Shown here: piece after piece, positions 17,165 to 50,207 of the stretch
Numbering within the stretch: the stretch's first letter is position 1
Layout of the letters: every line of letters starts with the position of its first letter
NCBI GenBank assembly: GCA_025603075.1
Contig: MU626387.1
Location: 1 to 59,037, forward strand
DNA: 59,037 bases
Reading direction: 5' to 3'
DNA from: Neoconidiobolus thromboides FSU 785
Taxonomy: Eukaryota; Fungi; Entomophthoromycota
Translations under genes and position numbers: made by a program
The notes under the pieces: generated by a model
Told to the model about the DNA's origin: nothing
Database searches by the model: none
The model's input: only the letters and a program-made list of their open reading frames with translations

Positions 17165-19699
17165 ATGGAGAACTTTTATAATCAAAATTTATATGTAAAT
17201 GAAGACGATAATAATAACGGTGAAGCATATCAAGACCCCTCACTCACCTTGTTCAATCCCTTTTTAATGGACCAATTTCCATCTGAGTAATACACTTTTA
17301 TAATATTAAAATATTATAATAACTTTATTATAGAGTAAATGAAAATCCAATTGATTTTACCCCAGAAATGCTTTTTAATATTGGAATGAAGGGTAGTAAT
17401 ATGCATTCTGCCCTCTTCAATCAACCACCAAAAACTTATATCAATCAAATGCCAAATAACAATGATTTGTTTCAAAATCCTTATCCACAACCACAACCAC
17501 AACCACAACCAACGGATATGCAATTGTTCAATAATAGCGCTACATTTAGTTCTACAAATGCAACTCCTATGCCATTACAACAGCCAAATTTAAACCCAAA
17601 TAATCTTCAATTACCTTATCAACCTCAACCTCAAGCACCACAACAAACCTTATCACAAGGGATCCCTCAACAAACTCAATTATCTTCACCTAATGTAAGT
17701 GTATTAAAAGCACCAAAATTAACTAATAGTCAAACCACTGGGATTTATTCTTCAACTGGGTTTGATTTATTAAATATCTTGGTATATATCGCTAATCGTC
17801 CTAATCCGATTGTAAATATTGGCCCTATTGATCTTAGCTGTGCTTTCCTTTTGGTAGATGCTAGACAATATGATTTTCCAATTGTATATGCTAGTCCAAC
17901 TTTTGAAACATTAACAGGGTATACACCTAATGAATGTGTTGGGCGTAATTGTAGATTTTTACAAGCACCTGATGGTCGAGTTACTGAAGGATCACGTCGT
18001 AAATTCTCTGATAATAATTCTATTTTTATGTTTAAAAATAAGATTATGGCTGTACAAGAACATCAAGCTAGTTTAGTCAACTATAAAAAGAATGGACAAG
18101 CTTTCTTCAATTTAGTTACTATTATTCCAATTGTTGAAGGCGGATCTGTTAATTTTTTTGTTGGATTACAAGTTGATTTAGTTGATCAACCAAATGCTAT
18201 TATAAATAATTTAAAAAATAGTGCGTTTTCTATCAACTATGGTAAACCTACCTTTACTAAAACAATTTCAAGTAAGAATGAGATAATATTCATTTGATTT
18301 TTAATTAATTTTGATTTTATTAGGTGAGCATAAAAATTTTAATGAATTGCCCAATTCTATCCCTTATGAAAATTTAGCTTCTATTTTTGATGATAATGCT
18401 AATCAAGATAATAACAATAATAATCATTCAGAAGCTAATTATAGAGAATGGATTAAATATATGCTTGATAAATGTGATGATTTTATCTATGTATTATCCT
18501 TAAAAGGCACCTTCCTTTATGCTTCACCCTCTTCTAAAAATTTACTAGGATATGCATCAGAAGATTTAATTGGCCAAAATTTGGCTAAGATCTGTCATCC
18601 AGGAGATTTAGTACCAACTTTAAGAGAGTTAAAGGAAATTGGTAATAATGAAAATTCCATTAACTTAACTTTCCGATTTAAAGTAAAAGATGGAGCTGAA
18701 TACTCTTGGTTAGAATCTTCTGGTAAGCTTCATGGTGATCTTGGTAAAGGACGTAGATGTATTGTACTTACAGGTAGAATACGTCAAATGTTCCAATTAT
18801 CAAGCGGTGCCTTGATTGAAACTGGTGGTGATGTTGGTGATAATGATTTATTCTTTAAATTATCTAATGATGGTATTATTTTACATGCTTCTTCCAACTT
18901 AAACGTTCTCCTTGGTTATGAGCAACAAGAAATTATTGGCACTACCTTATATCAATTATTGCCAGCAGATCGTTCTTATACTTTAACCAATGTATTAGAA
19001 CAAGCAGCAAGTGGAAATTCAGCTAGATTTAATCATCACCTTCAAAATAAACGTGGTAATTTAATAGTTACTACTTCTTCTTTCTTCCCAGGCAATGAAA
19101 CCAACCCAATTGATCCCGAGGATAAGACAAATTTTATACTTTTACGTATGAATTTAGAATTAAATATACCACCTAATGAATTGAATGTGGATTATAAAGT
19201 AGAAACACTTATTAGTAACCCATTCCATAATATGGATGATATCTTTAGATTTGATGAAAATAATAGTAAATCGAGTTGGCAATACGAATTACATCAACTT
19301 AAAATTAAGAATCGTAAACTTAAAGAACAAATTAATGCTTTAGATCCCATTTCCAGAAATAAAAAGGTACTTTTTTATAACAATACGACAATAATAGCTT
19401 AATACTAATTGATGTTTTATTTTATTTAGAAAAAGAATGGGAATAGAAAAGTGAAGACATGTATGAGTTGTAATCGTACTAGTACTACTGAATGGCGTCG
19501 TGGACCTAATGGACCATCTACTTTATGTAATCCATGTGGCTTAAAATATGCTAAAGGATCAGCTCCATTTAATAAAATGAGTCGAGGTAATAGTGATAGT
19601 AGTCAAAGTAAATCCCAAGGGGATGTTAGTGAATTACCTTTATTAAATGGTGAAAATAATAGTAGTGGAGAAAATGTTAGTGAAGCTATTATGTCTTAA
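17165..19699 (+). CDS. wc-1: White collar-1 / MadA-type blue-light receptor (LOV-PAS-PAS-GATA), 4 exons, about 790 aa
   Basis: Introns 17287-17333, 18272-18323 and 19367-19429 join in frame. LOV motif GRNCRFLQ with the fungal loop insertion, two further PAS domains, basic NLS, GATA finger CMSC-X18-CNPC. Confidence 0.95.
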
Positions 19700-23715: not shown

Positions 23716-25986
23716 TTATTTTTTATTTATTAAACATAAATAAAAATTTAATAATGGATCCCTATGAGATAAATCTAACTCCATAGAATTAAAAGATTGT
23801 AATAATAATTTTAAACTTTGTTGTTTGAAATTTGGTTGAAATTGAAAATACCATTGTTTAAAAAATTCAAAATAATTGTTCAAATAAATCAATGGTACTT
23901 TGGAGTAAATTTCAATATAACATTGAAAATAATTGAATTTAAGTGGAGCATCTGAATGTTGAATTTTATCTTGAAGTTTATTAATAAGATTCAAAATAGT
24001 ACGTTGAGATATATTTTTTTGATTTAATAAACTATCAATTAATTGTAGATAAATCATTTTAAATTGATTATATGTTAAATTTTTAGGATATTGCTAAATA
24101 TAAAATTAATTAATTTTGTATTATAAAAAATAAAATTAATAAACACAATTATTTACCTCCATAATAACTTTTTGATACCAAAATACAAATGGAACTACAA
24201 TATCTTTTTGTTGAATTTTTAAGAAAGCTAATATTGATTCATGAGCTTGATAATAACAATTCATAGTTAACCAATTGTTAGAAGATAATAGATAAGGTTG
24301 AATTAATATTAAATAATTTTTAATTTGTAATAAACTCATTTCTTCCATCATATTTTCTAAAAAATAAATCAAATAATTTAATTTTCCTTGTTGAATTAAA
24401 TTATTAATTTGATTGTTTTGATTGTTTTTTAGTAATATTATCATTTTATCTACAATATTATTTTCTTTTCTTTTATTTGATTTATTAATTAATTTCAACC
24501 AATTAAATAATTGTTGTTGATTTAATAAATAATTTTCATATCTTAATTTAGGAGATTGAATATGTAATATAAAATTTAAATTTTGATAAATTAAATATAA
24601 ATATTCAAATTCCTTAATTGTTGGTACATGTTGAATGAGATTATTTTGATTTGGATAAAATTGAAGATTAAGGAAGACTAATAAAAATAGAATATTTTTT
24701 AAATGTTTGATACTAGCTAAATAGCTTGGATCTTTCATTATTAATAAATTATCATGTGCTAATAAATAGAAATAATTAGTAAAATTAATTTATAATATTT
24801 TATATTTTATTTTACCTTCAAAATAAATATTCCACTGTTGATAAAGTTCAATACTAAAATTACAATATCTAAAAAATAAAGAATAAATAAAAAATAAAAA
24901 AAAATAAAATAAAAAAATAAAATAATATAATATAATATAATATAATATAATATATATAATATAATATAATATATAATTAATAAAATAGTAATAGAATATT
25001 TTACCTATCTAAAAAAAATAATTTAAATTTTTGATTTTGATTAAATTGATCTAATTTTAGTATCAATTGACTAATGATTTTAGCTATCTTTGGGATATAA
25101 TTTAATACTAAATCCGTTTTAATCTCTTTAAAATGGGAAAAGGCATCCTAAAACAATACAAATATAATTAAATTAGGACAATCTTATTAATAATAATTTT
25201 CATAAGCTTACCTCTCCAGTGCTATTAGGTGTCATTTTTAAAAAATAATTAATTAAATTATCCACAATAAATAATAATAACTTTTCATCTCTTTCATAAT
25301 TTATCTCATTAAATAATAAAAACATATTCAATTCTTTTTCATCCAAAATAAAATTAAAACAAAATATCCATTGTTTAAAATATTGATTGAAATTCATCCA
25401 TAATTGTATCTTTGATTCAAATATAGTTTGTAGTTCTAATTTTAATTTAAAATTAATAGATTGATGTATTTTTTTATATGTAAATAATATAGCTGAATAA
25501 ACAATAATTTCCCATTTATTATTATTATTATCTTTGACACTTGTATTTATAACAATATCATTATTATCATTATTATCATCTTCATTATTTAAAAACATTG
25601 CCCAATAATAAGGATTGTTAACTCTTTTTTTATCTACTATTAACTTCATTTCTACTTTCTCCTTTTTATTTTCTTGTTTAATAATCGAATCCAAATTACT
25701 AACAAATATCGATAAACTTAAATAATGAATTAATTCAAATAATAACTTTGATTGTTCATTATCTGTTGTTTCAGATTTATTATATAATTTTAATATTTCT
25801 TGTTTTTGTATTAATTGATTGATTATTTTACTTAAATTAATAGAATCTGTTCTTTTAAGACTGATAATAAGATTATTGATAACATCTGAGAGAGTTATTG
25901 TATCTTCTTTTGATGGTATTTTTTTATTATTACTGACGTCTATTTGATATTGTGAATATTCATAATTGGCACTAATGAAATTATAA

Positions 25987-26022
<36 letters not shown>

Positions 26023-27797
26023 AAGTATATTGAGTTTACCATTTTATTAAATAACTTGAATTTAATAATTTTAATAATAAATTTTGAATTAATATTGAAC
26101 TATTGTTGTCATTTAAATAATCTAAAATAAAAAATAATTGTTATTATTATTATTATTATATTATTAAATGTTATATAAAATTACCATTTATTCTTTTTAA
26201 TACTGTATAAATAATAATTAATTCTTGATTAATATCTTTAATATCTTTTAACTTCTTGTTTTCACTTAAAAATAATTCATTTAAATAAAATTCCATTTGA
26301 AATAATATATTTGTTATTTGTGGTTTATAACTATCCAATTTAGTATCTATAATAATAATAATTAGTATTCCATATAACATCCTATAATTATATTTATAAG
26401 ATTGAATGCCTTCACTTACTTATTCTCCTCATATAATAACAATATAATAATATAATAATTCCACATGATTTCATATCTTTTAATTCCATAAAATGATTAA
26501 AACTCATAATAAAACTATCCATTAATTCAATTGAATACCAATTGGTTGGAATATAATTAATATATTCTTTTATATAAATTAAATTCATGGAAATCTATAA
26601 AAATAAAAAGAATTATTATCTTTTATTTCATTATTTTTATTTATCTTAATAATTTTTTGTATTATAGTTATAATTATTATTGCTATTATTATTATAAAAA
26701 CTAGGTTACTTACTAAATCAAATAAATTCAATTGTGATAATTCCATAATTAATAAAATAGAAGTGGACAAATGTTTACCGATGATTTTATAATCATAAGG
26801 ATCATCTCTAAATTCAACATAAAATATAAAAACAAAATAAACATAATTAATCAATAAATTTCATTCTTCTATTTTTCACTTACTTTAAACAATAATTCAA
26901 ATATTCTTTTCTTTTCAATTCACACTTTAAGTTTAATTGATTTGTTAAGAGATGAATACTGAAAAGTAAACCTTAATATTAGCATTAATAAAAAAAAACA
27001 AGTTAAATTACCTATCTTCATTAATATATTTTAAATTTTTAAAATACAAACTTTGATTATAAATAATTTGTTTCTGCTGAGAAGTAAACCATTCTTTATA
27101 AGGTGATGTCTATATATTAATTAAATATTAATTAAGTATTAATTAAATATTTTTAGAAATTAAAAATATTAATTCTTCTTTCAACTTAATCTTACTTTTA
27201 AATCAATTATCGATTGCTCAATTTGGGTAATAAAATAATATCTCAAGAAAACTAAATCCTTATAAATCTCTTTCTCTTTCTCATTTAATCCTTCCTGTGT
27301 ACTAAAAATAAAATCAATAAAATCAACATTATCATATCGTTTTTGATCAATTTCCATTATTTAAAAAATAAACTCACTTTAACCAAATCATAGCAGGTAG
27401 GATGGTATCCGAATTTAATAAATTATCTAAAAATCGTTCACTCTTTTTAGTTAATAAAATCTTACTATCCGTATCAGCAAAGGGATTAGATAACCAAGAG
27501 AGTTGAGTAATGTTACTAACTGTTTTAAGTGAGTGGTAATAAAATAAAAAAACAAAGTCATTAGTTATTAGTTTTAATTATTAATTTATTTCTATTCTAT
27601 TATTTAATTTATAGAATTCCTGAGATAATTCACTTACTTATTGGAAAATAAAATTTGCTCGGTTGGTAACTTAAAGCAGAATTAAAACATCGTTGAAATA
27701 GGATGGGCTTGTTACCCAAATCAAGTTTATAAGATTTATCATATAACATATCTATCATAGTATTGACCATGATATTAATGGCTAAGCTAGAAGACAT
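23716..27797 (-). CDS. Large alpha-helical protein, multi-exon; candidate highly diverged FANCA homolog
   Basis: ATG 27797 followed by spliceable exons covering several track ORFs. Motifs ALSYQP..QLSW..MIW..SPYKEWF..IHLL and NWL..VVPFVFW..IYLQLI match order and spacing of human FANCA as recalled. The gene is real with high probability; the FANCA identity is tentative. Confidence 0.45.
24891..24980. repeat. A-rich and (TAATA)n microsatellite inside an intron
   Basis: Direct tandem aataa/taata units. Confidence 0.85.
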
Positions 27798-28165
27798 TTT
27801 CAATTATCGTATTGTTTATTTAAGTTGTTGTGTGGTTTAAATTTAAATTTAAATTTATTTAGATATAAAAAAGATGACTAAAATTCTATTTTCAACTTTA
27901 AGTAATGTAAATTAATAAATAATCAAATTTCATGCTTAAAGAATTAACAATTCAATGTGATTTTTAAACATTTGATTTGATTTCAACTTAAAAAAATAAA
28001 CATTACTATTTCCCTCTTGCATCCACTACAATTTCTTATATCAACCGTTAAGTTTTTTTTATATTAATTTTGGACTTTTAATAGTAAACCCCATGAGACT
28101 TTGATTCCTTCAATATAGTATTTAAAAAAGTTTTTCATGTAAAAAAAACATTCAATCAAATTTAT

Positions 28166-34953: not shown

Positions 34954-37900
34954 TTAAAAGGGTTCAAATCCATGCTTCTTAGAAAACCTTTTCATCATAG
35001 CCATTAAAAAGTTAATATTCATATGACAACACGCTTCATTATTTGTTTTTGCAGAATCACTAATATGCGTGATTTGGTTAAGCTAGATCAAAAATTAATA
35101 AATAAACTAATAAAGTAAAAAAATCATTACAATTTTGCCTTTAACCTCTGGAGTAATAATTTCTTTGAAAGCTAATTAATTATTGATTTAGTAAATTGGT
35201 ATCATAAACCCTAATTAGACTTACTATATAAGTATTCTAATAGAGGTAAGTCTCTAATATATTGAATAGATTCACTATCAACACTCTTAAATCCAGTTTG
35301 ATAAATTAACTTAAACCTTTCTGAATAATCTACACCAGAAGAAAAAAACTGTACAAAATTGGCCATAATGATTTTATCTAAATAAATTAAACATTTAATT
35401 TGAACAACTAAGCTTAACTTACCACCATACCATTTAACGCTTTCAATCAATAATGGAAGGCATAATGGACCAAATGCATAAGAACAAAATGAATTTGAAT
35501 CAACTAAATTTTCTGATAATAAAGATGGTATTGACAAGTAACGGCTAAACAAAAAGTAAATAAAATAAATTTTAGAATATTATCTCTTACTATATTGCTT
35601 CCTCAGATCTCTTGTTAAAAACACAAGCCTGAAATATAAACCTTGAAGCAATTTCTTTATCACCAAGGTACCTAAAGCAGCTGTTTGCTAAAATGTACAA
35701 TAGATCTGTCAAAGTGTTTAAAGACAACTTAATATCAGACATAGATCCTTGAGAAATATTGGTAATTAACTCTTGTAACCTAATATTATTAAGAATTTTA
35801 AAACTAATTAATAAAAAACAAACTTTTGAGATGTTTCTGGATTAACTTGATAAAAATAAAATTCTTTTGGGACTGTAAATAAGAGTGAAAATATTCCAAA
35901 GTCTTCATAAGCTCCCTAAAATAATGGATTAGATTATTACTTTAAGATAAATAATAATCTACAATGAGATGGAAATCTTTATGTAACATTATAAGCGAAA
36001 ATACGGATCCCGAAAGTAAATAAAGGAAGCCATATCCTTTTAGTTGCTTTAAGCAAGTTACGATCCTAGGCTAAATAAAAATGAATTTTTTACATACCAA
36101 TACGAAATAAACTTTTACCATCAAGTGGGAGCAATGTTGAAAAAAAGATATTGCCTTAAAAAGAATAATCAAACTCATTTTAATCTTAATCAAATCGTCT
36201 TGCCTTTCAAAGTAATTTTCAATCTCATTGAATACTATAATTGTTAGAACAAATTGAAGTAAAACAGTTGGACTTACAAAGTTTATTGGGAGATTCGATA
36301 ATATCACTTGGAATACATCTATAAACCAATAAAATAGCATGGTATAAGTTTCCTAATTCAACTATAAAAAAGTTATTAAAGATAATTAGATTTAGCTTAG
36401 TGAATTACCAATGATGGGCTTTTTTATCTTAGAATTATTTGGACTGATTCTTTCAAAAACCTGTGCCCCGATTCCATATTTTTCTTGGCTAAAGAAATAA
36501 ATAAACGCCATATCCTATGAAAGAATTAATATGAACTATTAACTGACCAAATTAAGCCTACCAAATCTCTGTTTTTTGGTACTAAACTTCCCTTATAATT
36601 TAAAAGAGCTTCTTCATCATTTGAATCCAATAGCATATCGTCCTCAATTTTATCACCTTTAATATAACTTTGGTAATAAATGCCCAGTTTAGAATGGGCT
36701 TTTAGTTCATCAAATGTATTATTTAACAACGTTATTTTCTGGGTAATATATAAAAGACCATCACTTTTATCATATCTTGTAAATTCATTTAAAAAGAGCA
36801 TACTCTCTGGACTCATTTGAGATGCAGCTGCACCTTCAATATTCTTTCTTAATTGATTAGAAACATCAACATAATAGCTATGAACCTCATTAGCTAGATT
36901 TAATGCACTAGTAAAAAAACTCTATAAAAAGTTCATCAAACTTATTAATATCACTTTATTATATTACCTTATTGTATGCTTTGATTGCAAGGAGGATTTG
37001 TTCATCTATATAATCTAATGCTTTTTCACTCTTTTGAAATGTTAACATATTATAAATACTAGTATTAAATTGACATACTCCTACAGGCTTAACTAGTATA
37101 GGCAACGTATCAATCTTTGATTCAGTTTTGTTCTCATCATCCTAAAGAATAAGTTAAATATATTTGAACTATATAATTATTACTTCAACTAGTACAAAGC
37201 CAATTTCATCATTGTAGGTCTAAAATAAGTTAGCTAATAATTTTATAACTTAAATATAATAACCATAAGTTCTATAAACAAATTCAGTAAAAATTTTATA
37301 AATAAATTTTATAATTACCATCACTAGGACAAATAAATTCGCTTAATTCAGAAACGAATAGCTGGTAATCATTATCATTAGCTAAATCAAATACATTTTA
37401 ATATTCTTATATTTTTATAACCAAATTTACTAACCGTTTCCTTTTAAAGGTATTAAACTTATTAAGTCTTGCTTTAAGTCGTTATGTTTCTTATATTTTT
37501 CACGAAGACGCGAAACAATAGAAAATGGGATTTCACGTACTATATCAACAATGTCTAGAATTTGTGAGAATTGTCATACATTCTTATATTAAACTTCAAG
37601 CTATAAATTACCTAATTCATTTGTAAGTACACCTGGTGACAAAAGCCAATAAAAATAAAATACGATAGCAGTATCTTTATTGATCTCTTTTATCTCATCA
37701 AAAGCAGGTGCTAATTGATAATAACTACATGGTTGAATATTTAAAAGTATACTATCTTTCTTTAATTGTTGTTGAATGTCAATTAATGAAAGGTTTGATA
37801 GCTTCTCTACAAGTTCTGAGTTCATTTTTTCAATTTCTAAAATTCAATCAAGATATTAAATTAAAGTATAGGCTTAACTTACCTGCTTTAATATTGAATT

Positions 37901-38882
37901 TTTCTTTAGCTTCATGTTTTTCTACTTGAATTACAAATTCCAATAACTCCTCTACTCTTTGCCAGTCTATCTTACTAAATAAAGTTTAAATTATATATCA
38001 GATCTTCAGTAAAGTTTTACCTAATCTCTTCAGTTTCATTTTTCCTATCCACACACATTTGACCCAATTCACGTACTTTATTATAATCATTTTTAAGAAA
38101 AGCAAATTCAATTAAATCATAAACAATAGAAAACCATGTATCTGATGGCATATTTTGTTTAGAAGTGCCATAATTGACAATAAGTTGATCATAAAAATAG
38201 TCAAAAAATTTGGTAGCGTCACCCAACATATTTAACAACTTAAATTTATTTTTATAAACACATCTTAAAACCCATTGTTGATATAAATAGATGGGTTTTA
38301 AATAATCCGGTTTGTTTTGAAATAATAATTCTTTCGATTGATTATTCGCAGAATCAATATTATCAAGATCATTGCTAGTAATCATTAGTTTGACTTTAAA
38401 TTCTATAATATAATAATTACTATGATAAAGATAAACTAGCAATTAATACCGCTCTTTGCATTTCCAAAGATATTTTTCCAATTTCTTTTAAACTCAAATT
38501 GGCACAATCAATTAACTTTAATTATTAGATTTATACATTTATACAAACTAGCTAAATACCATCGCCCCAAACTTTAACAGTAATTTTTGACGTGCGGTAA
38601 CTGCATAAACAGAAGCAAATGCAGGTAATCCAGTATTATAAAAATGAATACTTTCAACTGGTTTTAATATTAAAGTAGTAAGCACTCTTTCGTTCAGAAA
38701 TGAAGGCAGCCATTTATTTGCAAATATCCTTTTAGCTTCTATGGTTTCTAATTTACTAATCTTATTAAAGTTTAGAAATTCGTGTAATTATTTGATAAGC
38801 CTACTTCTTGGGATAGTAAATTGGGTTGAATTAAATAATCAAAAAAATTGCTCGTATTCTCTTTGGTCGTAATCTCTTTCAT
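34954..38882 (-). CDS. INTS8: Integrator complex subunit 8-like protein, multi-exon
   Basis: N-terminal FFDYLIQPNLL, KLLLKFGAM..LSLKEIGK, LYQQWVLRCV, VYDL; C-terminal ANFVQFF..VDY..QYIRDLPLLEYL..NFLMAMMKRF. All parallel recalled INTS8 segments in order. Stop at 34954-34956. Confidence 0.8.
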
Positions 38883-46191: not shown

Positions 46192-48445
46192 TCAATTTAA
46201 TTTTTGAATAATTAAATCAGCGCCATGGTTACCTGTATTTTGGATCTCAACAATTTCTTTTTTATGTGATTTTAATATCGCTTTCACTTGTTTTTCAGTA
46301 TCTGGGGATTCCAAAAGTGATAATATAATAAAACTCCCTCTATTCTTACAAAATTGGACTAATTTTTCTTTACTCAAAGCTTCAAAAAAAGGTTTAGCAT
46401 ATGGATGAGCTTTACTTTCTTCATCTTCAAATTTAATTAATTTTTTAATAACTCGACTTGAATTGATATGCTCTAATAAAGTAGTTCCATCCACCTGATA
46501 ATCATCTTTAATTAATTGACATATCTTTTGTATTAATTTAGATTTATCTCCTTGTCCATGAATAATAGTATCTTCTAATATTTGACTTGGTTTAGGTTGA
46601 ATTAATATATCGCCAACATGAATTTCAAAATATTCAATTAATCCTTTTGATACAGCTACATTCAATTCATTAGCACGTGCACTTGATTCTTTTTTGGAAA
46701 ATTGAGTTCTTATTTCATCATGAGAAGCCAATAAATCAACGGACGGTTTTGATATATATCTAAATGATCTACCAACTAAGAGATAAGCAATTGCACGTCT
46801 ACCAAATTTGTCTTCCAATAGATTGTTAGCATTCTTGATTAATTCAACTATGATATTTTTATCTACTAATACAGTATCGTCTACTACATCAAATAATTGT
46901 AATAATACTAAATGCCCATATTCTTCTTTAGCTATCTTTTCAACAAAAGGTTTAAATGATTTCACTATTACTTTACGATCTTTAACGTTTCCATAAAGTA
47001 AACATTTCATGGCTACTTTAGAGCCATCTTTAGTGTGAAGTATTTCGACTACATGTTCTTTAAGTAAACCAATCATTTCCTATTTGTTTTACATTAACAT
47101 TTTCAATATTTTATATAATTATTTTTATTTACCTGAATTTGAGCTGGATTAGCATTATCAAGATACTCAATAAGAGCATGATGAATAATAGAATGATTGA
47201 TAATTCCTTTATTTAAAATTTTAACTAAAGAGTCATATAATGATTGTAATATAGATTCTCTTTTAGCTTCATTGGATTTTAATAATGATTCAAGGGTAGT
47301 ATATTGACTTGCATTATTCTACAGTAATATTAAAATTAAATCAAATTATTAATAGTAAGTATAAATTCTGAATTTACTTTAAAAACAACAAATTCAGGGC
47401 CAAAGAATTCTTGTAATAAATTTGTTTTTTGTTCTGGATTAGCATAAATTGCATATGCTTCTTCAATTACACTTGAACCATCCTAATTAATTTAATATTG
47501 AACATTAAAAAATCATTACAAAATCTATGATAAACTTACTTTTTGAGTTATAAGTCTTTGAACATTACCATAAAATTCGGAGATGATAGAACCTCTTTGT
47601 TCTTTACTAAAAAAATATCATTAAAAACAAAAACTTTAAATTAAGCTTGATTAAACTTACCAATATTTTAAAATTTTCAATACAATAAAATGTCCATATT
47701 TAGCTTTAGCTAATTCCAAATAATGACCTTTCAACTCTTCGGCAATAATAGCTCTATGTTGTTGACTACCATATTTTAAACAAGTTTGAACAATTCTAGA
47801 AGCATCATGTTTTAAAGATAACTAAAAATCGATTTACCATCAATATCTTCATTCAATCGAAAAAAGAACAACCAAATACTTACCTCGACTACCTTTCCTT
47901 TTAACAAGTCAATCATGTCTGTTACATGACATTCTAAGCTTTTTCTTGGTACTTTACTATTTCTCATCTTTTCCCATATCTTTTTACAGTGGGATAAAAG
48001 TTCAGCATGTGGTTTGTTAGCTTTACGTTCTAAACGCAAGGCTTTGGTAGCTTGATGAGATTCTTTGGAACCTATTATTTAAAAAATTATCATTATTAGT
48101 TCTTCATTCTATCTAATTTATAGCTGCTAACAACTTACTTTGTTTATTTTGATTTTTAAACTCTTCATTGATACCTTCTTCATGATTACCTTCTAAGTTT
48201 GAATCAAAGTTTTCGCCTACTTCTTCTTCATAATTTTCTTCATCAAAGTTTTCAAAATCTTCTACACTAGAAGCACCTTCTTCTTCTTCAGTTTGAGTGA
48301 CTGGTTTAGATAACTTTTTAGGTGGTGAATCAGCAACGGAATTATTTTTACGTTTACTGTCTATAAGAGAAGGTTAGATATTGTTATTAAGAATCATGGG
48401 TTTAAATGAAATCTTACTACTTTTTATATTCAATTTATTTGCCAT
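46192..48445 (-). CDS. PUF6: Puf6/PUM3-type nucleolar Pumilio protein, multi-exon
   Basis: QKALRLERKANKPH..KKIWEKMR, HDASRIVQTCLKYG, EILHTKDGSKVAM, GHLVLLQLFDVVDDTVL, DKFGRRAIAYLL. Confidence 0.92.
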
Positions 48446-48677: not shown

Positions 48678-50207
48678 TTAATTCTGTGTGATTAATGCTG
48701 GACTACGATTAGGAATTATATGCCTTGAAATAAAATGGACTAGGGAAGCGGATAGAGTAATAGGAAGTATAAACAATTTAAGGGTAAATGAAGGTAGAGC
48801 AGTGATTCTAATCGGAAGCTCCGGTAGCAGCGGCCCATCCTTTTGAAATAACCAAGAAGCTACCTCAATACCATTATTATCATTAGAATTTTCATGATCA
48901 AAATCTTCCAAATTAAGCTCTGTTTGAAGTTGTTGAATTTGTCTTTGAATAACAGTAATACTTTGTTCAAATCTTTTAATTTCTAATTTTTCTTTTTGAT
49001 ATTGACGCATAACTAATTGAGATAACTGATTTAAAGGTGGCTCAAATTGATTTTTAACTTTCGAGATATCTTGTTTTGTTGCAAAAGCTTGACGTAATTG
49101 ATCCATTTGATTTTCAAGCCCTTGTAATCGAAATTGCATACTTTGTAAAGCAGCTGTTTGATGACTGACCACTTGCTGTAATTCATTAGCACTATTGGTT
49201 AACAATTGGCCCAAATGAACCATTGGTCTTACTTCAGCAGCTAATATGAATAGTAGTAAATTAAAATCCGATACAAAAGTATCCAAATTAGTTAATTGGG
49301 AACGAGCTATTAAAAATATATAACCTCCAAGGATAGGGCTGATTATTACCATTAAAAAGCTTATTTTTTCATACCACCATAATCGATATTGAGCTTGGTA
49401 ACGTAATGCTTCACTGCTGGCATCCGCTGGTAAGTTTTCATTTTGATTATACATTGTTAAATCAATTGGATTTATAAATCTTTTCTTGCGTGCAGCTAAA
49501 TAAAAATCCCAAGGTAGTTGAATCAGATTGTATAAATAAAATATAACTAAAATTAACAAAAACAAATCACTCCATAAATCTTCCATACCCAGAAAGAAAG
49601 CTAATAATGGGGGTAATAGTGCGAGTAAAATAGGTAAAATAGCTAATGAACTACTATTTTTTACTGGAAGTAAATCAATGCTTTCATTGTTTTTTATAGG
49701 GTTTGTTTTGCTTGTTGTTTCTGTTCGATTTGTTGATGGTATATTATTATTTTCTAAATTATCCATTGATGTAGTTGGTATCCTAATCGTATTGAATGGT
49801 GAATATTGACTTGGTTGAGAATGGGTACGAATCATCATAGGCGATAATAATTGATTATTTAATATTGGGGAAGAGGGCTGAGATAAAGATAGAGAAATTT
49901 TAATAGCCGGTGTTAATAAAGGCGATAGTAAATTACTAGTTGATTTGGATGAAGTTGAATTTGGTACGATTTTTATATTGTTTGGTATTGTTTTAAATCG
50001 CTTATTTACTGGTTTAAAAGCTGTATTTGGTTTGGAATTGTCTTTGGTTAATACGGTGATTGTATAAGTTATATAGAAAAATAAAATAAATGATAGACGG
50101 GCAGTAATAGTAACTAAATTGGAATTGACAAGTCCTGATGCTAAAATAAGTATGATAAGAAAAGAAACTAATTTGATTAATCTCCTCAAGAATTGCCGAG
50201 AACTCAC
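48678..50207 (-). CDS. Conserved-looking fungal multi-pass membrane protein of unknown function with C-terminal coiled coil; 5' end uncertain
   Basis: 509-aa ORF with several hydrophobic segments and motifs PWDFYLAAR, PILGGY, SDFNLLLFILAAEVRP. The track start is GTG, so an upstream exon is likely. Confidence 0.8.
   Translation of the reverse strand: MSSRQFLRRLIKLVSFLIILILASGLVNSNLVTITARLSFILFFYITYTITVLTKDNSKPNTAFKPVNKRFKTIPNNIKIVPNSTSSKSTSNLLSPLLTPAIKISLSLSQPSSPILNNQLLSPMMIRTHSQPSQYSPFNTIRIPTTSMDNLENNNIPSTNRTETTSKTNPIKNNESIDLLPVKNSSSLAILPILLALLPPLLAFFLGMEDLWSDLFLLILVIFYLYNLIQLPWDFYLAARKKRFINPIDLTMYNQNENLPADASSEALRYQAQYRLWWYEKISFLMVIISPILGGYIFLIARSQLTNLDTFVSDFNLLLFILAAEVRPMVHLGQLLTNSANELQQVVSHQTAALQSMQFRLQGLENQMDQLRQAFATKQDISKVKNQFEPPLNQLSQLVMRQYQKEKLEIKRFEQSITVIQRQIQQLQTELNLEDFDHENSNDNNGIEVASWLFQKDGPLLPELPIRITALPSFTLKLFILPITLSASLVHFISRHIIPNRSPALITQN

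What the first reader, a model, noticed from the sequence alone, without database searches (positions are those of the whole stretch)
34954..38882. Integrator subunit INTS8 ortholog with a variant PP2A-docking motif
Seen: N-terminal NFFDYLIQPNLL, YLYQQWVLRCV, and C-terminal FVQFF..VDY..YIRDLPLLEYL..FLMAMMKRF. Recalled human INTS8 has WFEFLLEESLL, YNRWAIRTIV and LCQFL.EIDY..YIWDVTILEYL..FLQAMAKLYF. Established: INTS8 recruits PP2A to Integrator via the WFEFL motif, and yeasts lack Integrator. Inference: this fungus may have an Integrator-PP2A (INTAC) module for snRNA 3' processing and promoter-proximal termination, with FFDYL as the docking motif.
Basis: partly seen in the sequence, partly recalled or inferred. 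Interest (0 to 1): 0.75.

Follow-up and report, generated by a model that had tools for sequence, protein, structure and literature searches.

The report
Probable divergent fungal Integrator subunit 8
This early-diverging fungus (Neoconidiobolus thromboides) carries a roughly 20-exon gene, truncated and unnamed in the public record, that is probably its very divergent copy of Integrator subunit 8, a scaffold of an RNA polymerase II termination machine that yeasts lack; relatives of this fungus already carry Integrator names in databases.

Summary
The organism is Neoconidiobolus thromboides FSU 785. The public record holds only a 240-aa "hypothetical protein" cut off at both ends.

Direct evidence for INTS8 is specific but weak. 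The large C-terminal exon hits one Pfam family only, TPR_INTS8 (13-15 bits, E 0.044-0.011, cut-off 27). The match is gapless over 57 residues at profile positions 379-435 of 488, and the distance to the stop codon fits the rest of the profile. Codons 13-16 read FFDY, a conservative version of the WFEF PP2A-docking motif. An ab initio splice model gives about 963 aa, and the modelled part looks like a TPR-type helical repeat.

The genome clearly encodes INTS11 (614 bits to human INTS11 against 327 to CPSF73) and INTS9. It also has exon-level hits to INTS2, INTS3, INTS5 and INTS6.

Exon-by-exon searches against solved structures and 1.8 billion proteins did not find INTS8. Expression and PP2A binding are untested.

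INTS11 is already named in dozens of early-diverging fungi, so this is a new, unannotated member of a known kind. The scan also noted this same stretch once more (s1-062954).

The parts
34954..38882 (-). Whole gene, ATG to TAA. The ab initio model has about 20 exons and about 963 aa; the middle part of the model is uncertain.
   Evidence: Three-frame reading, hand inspection of splice sites, dynamic-programming splice model.
38805..38882 (-). Exon 1, 26 codons, carrying the N-terminal motif. Donor is GTAGGC.
   Evidence: An in-frame stop lies 13 codons upstream of the ATG.
38835..38846 (-). FFDY, codons 13-16: candidate PP2A-A docking motif, a conservative variant of WFEF.
   Evidence: chance of the loose pattern in the first 30 residues is about 7e-4 from composition. 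WFEF function from PMC8091971. Binding is untested.
38560..38760 (-). Exon 2, 67 codons.
38421..38515 (-). Exon 3. The public model P0002 starts inside it, at MQRAV.
38021..38374 (-). Exon 4, the largest N-terminal exon. It holds YLYQQWVLRCV and a second FFDY at 38208-38197.
   Evidence: Its junctions are identical to those of public model P0002.
37883..37974 (-). Exon 5.
   Evidence: Junctions identical to P0002.
37612..37836 (-). Exon 6. The public model reads through its donor to a stop at about 37604.
35824..37554 (-). Middle exons, about 10, whose splice junctions are ambiguous. They include a predicted 8-nt micro-exon at 37271-37264 and two alternative frames at 35945-36070 and 35807-35941.
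   Evidence: No RNA or homologue evidence was available to settle the junctions.
35591..35779 (-). Exon holding a TPR-like helix pair (..LYILANSCFRYLGDKEIASRFIFQACVF..).
   Evidence: No Pfam hit on its own.
35225..35544 (-). Large C-terminal exon, 106 codons, with FVQFF, GVDY and YIRDLPLLEYL.
35229..35399 (-). Stretch matched to Pfam PF25756 TPR_INTS8, profile positions 379-435 of 488, without gaps.
   Evidence: 13 bits, E 0.041. (12.9-15 bits, E 0.044-0.011, the only family hit, robust to trimming).
35131..35171 (-). Small penultimate exon (..FKEIITPEVKGKI).
34954..35082 (-). Last exon, 42 codons plus the stop, with FLMAMMKRF.
   Evidence: No Pfam or PDB hit on its own.

Best explanation
The locus encodes a very divergent orthologue of Integrator subunit 8: an all-helical, TPR-like scaffold of roughly 960-1000 residues. 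By analogy with the animal complex, its C-terminal repeats would pack against INTS5 (and INTS6) in the 'shoulder' of Integrator. Its extreme N-terminus, with FFDY in place of WFEF, would hold the PP2A A subunit, so that the fungal Integrator combines the INTS11/INTS9 RNA endonuclease with a CTD/Spt5 phosphatase. Shown here: the gene, its motifs, a weak but family-specific profile match at the correct position, and the presence of INTS11 and INTS9, plus probable INTS2, 3, 5 and 6, in the same genome. Inferred: orthology (about 0.75), incorporation into the complex, and PP2A docking (about 0.45).
For: PF25756 TPR_INTS8 is the only Pfam family hit by the C-terminal exon. Three trimmings give 12.9-15 bits and E 0.044-0.011, with 57 residues aligned gaplessly to profile 379-435/488. 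57 residues remain to the stop against 53 remaining profile positions. FFDY sits at codons 13-16. WFEF is the four-residue PP2A-recruiting motif of INTS8 (PMC8091971), and it binds the A subunit Pp2A-29B (bioRxiv 10.1101/2023.03.05.531184). The chance of the loose pattern in the first 30 residues is about 7e-4. The model length is about 963 aa. The publicly annotated 240-aa part folds and embeds as a TPR-like helical repeat. No generic TPR Pfam family fires, as expected for degenerate repeats. In the genome, the ORF on G000:C127 scores 614 bits to human INTS11 against 327 to CPSF73. An exon on G000:C305 scores E 1e-11 and 1e-9 to fly and human INTS9 against 1e-3 to CPSF3. INTS2 scores 38.7 bits, INTS3 gives four colinear exons, INTS5_C 18.6 bits and the INTS6 beta-barrel 22.9 bits. 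INTS8 and INTS5 form the shoulder module, and the INTS8 C-terminus lies at the INTS5/INTS6/PP2A interface (bioRxiv 10.1101/2024.11.26.625369).
Against: The profile score is about half the family cut-off of 27 bits. At E around 0.01-0.04 it is no better than two plainly spurious hits among the same 18 pieces (RuvC_1 at 0.038, TPR_DENND3 at 0.072). phmmer of seven pieces, including the 240-aa public model, against all PDB chains never returned INTS8, although INTS8 is in PDB entries such as 7cun. HMMER of the C-terminal exon against 1.84 billion representatives gave only a spurious archaeal repeat protein. No relatives were found in metagenomes. The tetrapeptide FFDY occurs a second time in the protein, so it is not unique. 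There is no evidence of full-length expression. The public model is a truncated fragment with intron read-through, and the middle of my splice model is ambiguous.
Confidence: 0.75

Rival explanations
1. A lineage-specific TPR/alpha-solenoid protein unrelated to INTS8. On this view the 57-residue profile match and the N-terminal FFDY are chance resemblances between degenerate helical repeats in an AT-rich, F/Y/L/I/N/K-rich proteome.
For: The Pfam score is below the cut-off and comparable to spurious hits on other pieces. All pairwise and large-database searches found no INTS8. Fold and embedding searches return only generic TPR/Rgg/14-3-3-like helical repeats, with Z at most 9.6, below the level that means anything for helical repeats. 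FFDY occurs twice.
Against: A chance hit would have to land on the one family out of 24,736 that was predicted beforehand. It would also have to fall at the C-terminal end of both protein and profile with matching remaining lengths, in a protein of INTS8 size with a WFEF-like motif at the N-terminus. And it would have to do so in a genome that has the rest of Integrator but no other INTS8 candidate.
Confidence: 0.15
2. A true INTS8 orthologue that serves only as a structural shoulder subunit. FFDY would not bind PP2A, so the fungal Integrator would be an endonuclease complex without an INTAC-type phosphatase arm.
For: None of the four residues except the second F is identical to WFEF, and binding was not tested. 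The INTS6 evidence is only 22.9 bits on one exon, and the INTS6 C-terminal motif was not found. Even in flies the role attributed to the WFEF mutant is debated (bioRxiv 10.1101/2023.03.05.531184).
Against: All four changes are conservative (aromatic, aromatic, acidic, aromatic). The motif sits at the same extreme N-terminal position, and the pattern is rare by chance.
Confidence: 0.3
3. A decaying or weakly expressed remnant of INTS8 (a pseudogene), or two separate genes wrongly read as one.
For: The only public model is a 240-aa fragment with retained-intron ends. No transcript-derived protein containing exon 4 or the C-terminal exon is in the 5.8- or 1.8-billion protein sets. The best splice path needs an 8-nt micro-exon, and several junctions are ambiguous.
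Against: About 20 exons stay open in frame. Their canonical GTA/GTT..AG introns have the length typical of this gene, 42-60 nt. Both ends keep the INTS8-like motifs, and the partner genes are intact.
Confidence: 0.08

Closest known systems
Animal INTS8 (human and Drosophila; Pfam PF25756 TPR_INTS8; present in INTAC structures such as PDB 7cun/7pks)
   Same: Length of about 1000 aa, all-helical TPR-like build, an aromatic-aromatic-acidic-aromatic motif within the first ~25 residues, a C-terminal ~57-residue block that matches the family profile colinearly, and co-occurrence with INTS5, INTS6, INTS2, INTS9 and INTS11.
   Different: It is very divergent. The profile score is only 13-15 bits on the best exon, and there is no pairwise hit to the solved chains. 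The motif reads FFDY rather than WFEF. Complex membership and PP2A binding are untested.
Integrator subunits already annotated in early-diverging fungi (for example 'Integrator complex subunit 11' of Mortierella, Coemansia, Dimargaris, Rhizophagus, Rhizopus, Nowakowskiella)
   Same: They show that Integrator is retained outside Dikarya. The N. thromboides INTS11 is 47-60% identical to them.
   Different: Those records concern INTS11. I could not retrieve any fungal INTS8 for comparison. In N. thromboides, INTS11 is labelled only 'Metallo-hydrolase/oxidoreductase', and the INTS8 candidate is a truncated hypothetical protein.
Generic TPR scaffolds (HOP TPR2A, sNASP, kinesin light chain, Rgg/RNPP regulators)
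   Same: The N-terminal 240 aa gives weak sequence, fold and embedding resemblance to these.
   Different: No generic TPR Pfam model fires on any exon. All the matches are at noise level for helical repeats, and none covers the C-terminal block.

Membership tests
INTS8 (Pfam PF25756 TPR_INTS8) | Match to the family profile above the curated cut-off (27 bits) | tested here: inconclusive
Only single exons could be scanned. The C-terminal exon gives 12.9-15 bits, E 0.044-0.011, is the only family hit, and covers profile 379-435/488. Other exons give no hit.
INTS8 | Reciprocal sequence hit to a characterised INTS8 (solved human or fly chains, or database orthologues) | tested here: inconclusive
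   phmmer of seven pieces against PDB returned no INTS8. HMMER of the C-terminal exon against 1.84 billion representatives returned none. Exon-sized queries are too short for this divergence, and the word search cannot see 1000-aa proteins from a 100-240-aa query.
INTS8 | N-terminal four-residue PP2A-A docking motif (WFEF in fly and human) | tested here: inconclusive
   FFDY at codons 13-16 is a conservative variant at the equivalent position. It is rare by chance, but a second FFDY exists and binding is untested.
INTS8 | About 1000-aa all-alpha TPR-like solenoid | tested here: met
   The ab initio model has about 963 aa. The AF2 model of the 240-aa part is all helical. Atlas and fold neighbours are TPR-type.
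INTS8 | Genome encodes the partner subunits (INTS5, INTS6, INTS2) and the catalytic pair INTS11/INTS9 | tested here: met
   INTS11 614 bits against CPSF73 327. INTS9 E 1e-11. INTS2 38.7 bits. INTS3. INTS5_C 18.6 bits. INTS6 beta-barrel 22.9 bits. CPSF73 and CPSF100 are separate genes.
INTS8 | Physical membership of the Integrator shoulder with INTS5, and recruitment of PP2A A/C | not testable with these tools
   Needs purification and mass spectrometry, or multimer modelling of the full-length protein.

The most novel reading that the evidence does not exclude
The FFDY N-terminus is a working PP2A-A dock. Integrator in a non-dikaryan fungus would then be a two-enzyme INTAC (endonuclease plus PP2A), and recruitment of PP2A through an aromatic-acidic INTS8 motif would predate the animal-fungal split rather than being an animal invention.
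Probability: 0.4. Interest if true: 0.55.

Novelty: new member of a known kind. Interest (0 to 1): 0.38.

Why it matters
Integrator is still often called metazoan-specific in the literature, and yeasts lack it. Public records nevertheless already name INTS11 in many early-diverging fungi. What this locus adds is a candidate for the most divergent scaffold, INTS8, in an Entomophthoromycotina genome where it is truncated and unnamed. It also adds a hint that the PP2A-docking motif is older than animals. If confirmed, a small-genome fungus could be used to study Integrator-PP2A function and how Dikarya lost it. As it stands, this is mainly an annotation correction.

Tried and rejected
- Six-frame search of the whole genome with PF25756: no candidates, but the controls did not ring either, so it is uninformative.
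- Word search with the C-terminal exon: blank.
- HMMER of that exon against 1.84 billion representatives: one hit, an archaeal papain/Ig-repeat protein (P0001), spurious through repeated weak stretches.
- Two metagenome scans, with the C-terminal exon and with P0002: no relatives.
- ESM Atlas on the C-terminal exon: noise. On P0002: only generic TPR/Rgg clusters.
- AF2 without an alignment: the C-terminal exon had pLDDT 46 and was unusable. P0002 had pLDDT 53, and Foldseek and VIA-align gave only generic helical repeats.
- The look-up of encoding contigs for P0002: not on record.
- Pfam IntS11_C, IntS9_C, INTS6 C-terminal motif, INTS1 RPB2-binding and INTS4_C in the genome: no candidates, uninformative for short or divergent domains in an intron-rich genome.
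- A splice model with a low intron penalty over-split long exons and was discarded.
- Mol Cell 2020 paper on WFEF (PMC7660970): not held.
- Rejected reading: that the third beta-CASP locus (C90) is INTS9. It is CPSF100; INTS9 is on C305.
Full report
**What is there.** The window is AT-rich (about 26% G+C) and belongs to a 24.6-Mb assembly of 799 contigs. Reading the minus strand between 38882 and 34954 in three frames shows a chain of short open segments. They are joined by short GT..AG introns, with donors such as GTAAGT, GTAATT, GTAGGC and GTATGT and lengths mostly 42-60 nt.

| Peptide | Window coordinates (minus strand) |
|---|---|
| NFFDYLIQPNLL | 38849-38814 |
| YLYQQWVLRCV | 38289-38257 |
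| FVQFF | 35357-35343 |
| GVDY | 35336-35325 |
| YIRDLPLLEYL | 35261-35229 |
| FLMAMMKRF | 34984-35010 |

The ATG is at 38882 with an in-frame stop 13 codons upstream, and the stop TAA is at 34956-34954.

**Organism and public annotation.** A word search with the largest exon found one protein, P0002: [quoted passage not shown], 240 aa, on a contig of exactly the window's length. This confirms independently the organism named in earlier notes of this scan. P0002 begins at an internal Met inside exon 3, uses the same junctions as my exons 4, 5 and 6, and ends by reading through the donor of exon 6 into the intron. The public model is therefore a fragment truncated at both ends. The N-terminal motif and the whole C-terminal two thirds are unannotated.

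**Gene model.** I trained a simple dynamic-programming splice model on long ORFs from this genome and on the clear introns of this gene. It gives 20 exons and about 963 aa. A lower intron penalty over-splits. Exons 1-7 and the last four exons are clear by eye.

The stretch 37554-35824 has several equally legal paths. These include an 8-nt micro-exon at 37271-37264 flanked by 47- and 44-nt introns, and two competing frames around 36070-35807. No RNA-derived or homologous protein was available to settle this.

The joined protein was never assembled for, or sent to, any search or fold tool. That step is left out.

**Direct tests of the INTS8 reading.**
- I scanned 18 stop-free pieces covering the gene against Pfam. 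The big C-terminal exon hit PF25756, TPR_INTS8, and nothing else.
- Re-scanning three trimmings of that exon kept PF25756 as the only family. Scores were 12.9, 13.8 and 15.0 bits (E 0.044, 0.025, 0.011). Each time the same 57 residues aligned without net gaps to profile positions 379-435 of 488.
- After the matched block 57 residues remain to the stop, against 53 remaining profile positions. The ends of protein and profile therefore coincide.
- The score is about half the curated cut-off of 27 bits. Taken alone, it is no better than two obviously spurious hits on other pieces (RuvC_1 at E 0.038, TPR_DENND3 at 0.072).
- Its weight comes from three things together: it is the single family predicted beforehand out of 24,736, it falls at the right end of the protein, and it survives trimming.

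**Searches that did not find INTS8.**
- phmmer of seven pieces (N-terminal exon, exon 2, exon 4, the 240-aa P0002, the C-terminal exon, the last exon) against all PDB chains never returned INTS8. Only noise-level TPR proteins such as HOP came up.
- HMMER of the C-terminal exon against 1.84 billion representatives gave one spurious archaeal repeat protein.
- The word search with that exon, and two metagenome scans, were blank.
- AF2 without an alignment was poor (pLDDT 46 and 53). Foldseek, VIA-align and the ESM Atlas gave only generic TPR/Rgg/14-3-3-type helical repeats, with Z at most 9.6, below what is meaningful for helical repeats.
- These blanks are expected for 26-240-residue queries at this divergence.

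**The N-terminal motif.** A review documents that four residues of INTS8, WFEF, recruit PP2A, and that mutating them mimics loss of INTS8 or PP2A (PMC8091971). A later preprint states that this four-residue region binds the A subunit Pp2A-29B, and also questions how specific the mutant is (10.1101/2023.03.05.531184).

The fungal protein has FFDY at codons 13-16, followed by L. That is aromatic, aromatic, acidic, aromatic, as in WFEF. From the amino-acid composition of this window's open segments, the loose pattern [FWY][FWY][DE][FWY]L is expected about 7e-4 times in any 30 residues.

There are three caveats. FFDY occurs a second time, in exon 4 at 38208-38197. Binding is untested.

**Genome context.** It does not refute.

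| Subunit | Place | Result |
|---|---|---|
| INTS11 | 650-aa intronless ORF on G000:C127 | 614 bits (E 3e-183) to human INTS11, against 327 bits to CPSF73 |
| CPSF73 | C59 | separate gene with the CPSF73-100_C domain |
| CPSF100 | C90 (third beta-CASP locus) | identified as CPSF100, not INTS9 |
| INTS9 | exon on G000:C305 | E 1e-11 (fly) and 1e-9 (human) to INTS9, against 1e-3 to CPSF3; degenerate metal motif as in INTS9 |
| INTS2 | C53 | 38.7 bits on one exon, over the cut-off |
| INTS3 | C223 | four colinear exons, two over the cut-off |
| INTS5_C | C73 | 18.6 bits |
| INTS6 beta-barrel | C46 | 22.9 bits, E 1e-3 |

Searches for IntS11_C, IntS9_C, the INTS6 C-terminal motif, INTS1 and INTS4_C found no candidates. 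That is uninformative for short, divergent domains in an intron-rich genome. Earlier notes of this scan list INTS4, 5, 6, 7, 9, 10, 11 and 13 candidates in the same genome. I treated these as leads and verified only those in the table.

INTS8 pairs with INTS5 in the shoulder module, and its C-terminal region lies at the INTS5/INTS6/PP2A interface (10.1101/2024.11.26.625369). A genome that keeps these partners is therefore expected to keep INTS8. No other candidate was seen (weak test).

**Weighing.** Four things fit together:
- a family-specific profile match at the correct end of the protein;
- a WFEF-like motif at the correct end;
- the right size and fold class;
- an otherwise well-represented Integrator in the genome.

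This makes INTS8 orthology the best explanation; I put it at about 0.75. An unrelated lineage-specific TPR protein is about 0.15, and a decaying or mis-joined locus about 0.08. Given orthology, I put a functional PP2A dock at FFDY at roughly even odds.

**Novelty.** A search with the N. thromboides INTS11 returned dozens of records already named "Integrator complex subunit 11". They come from Mortierellomycota, Mucoromycota, Glomeromycotina, Kickxellomycotina, Dimargaritales and Chytridiomycota, and also from Entomophthora and Massospora under "hypothetical" names. Integrator outside Dikarya is thus already in public databases, although papers still write "metazoan-specific". I found no paper in the held library on Integrator in early-diverging fungi.

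The finding is therefore a new, unannotated and unusually divergent member of a known family, with a modestly interesting motif variant.

Noticed in passing
G000:C127 (L003:751-2700, +): An intronless 650-aa INTS11 orthologue (614 bits to human INTS11). The public record calls it only 'Metallo-hydrolase/oxidoreductase' (P0003). Pfam's IntS11_C domain is not detected in it, although relatives in Mortierella carry it.
   Followed up: partly
G000:C305 (L011:738-1082 and following exons, +): An INTS9 orthologue, split into several exons, with a degenerate metal-binding motif (..LILISNYQFCLALPFITE..). The Beta-Casp Pfam search missed it; only an 18.7-bit Lactamase_B_6 hit found it.
   Followed up: partly
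G000:C53, C223, C73, C46 (L005, L006/L007, L001, L012): Exon-level Pfam hits to INTS2 (38.7 bits), INTS3_N (four colinear exons), INTS5_C (18.6 bits) and the INTS6 beta-barrel (22.9 bits). Gene models were not built.
   Followed up: no
window 37264-37271 (-): The best splice path needs an 8-nt micro-exon flanked by 47- and 44-nt introns. It is unverified and could instead signal an alternative junction or a sequence error.
   Followed up: partly
window 38197-38208 (-): A second FFDY tetrapeptide (..TKFFDYFYDQL..) lies inside the TPR-like exon 4. It weakens the uniqueness of the N-terminal FFDY.
   Followed up: no
window 17368-19402 (+): Two adjacent long open frames with PAS/PAS_9 (LOV-type) domains. 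This is probably one White-Collar-1-like photoreceptor gene split by an intron.
   Followed up: no
window 46192-47076 (-) and 48678-50207 (-): An ORF with a CPL (NUC119)/PUF domain (Puf6/Nop9-like), and a 509-aa ORF with a weak Fez1 coiled-coil match.
   Followed up: no
window 24001-28000: G+C falls to 17-19% here, against about 26% elsewhere in the window.
   Followed up: no
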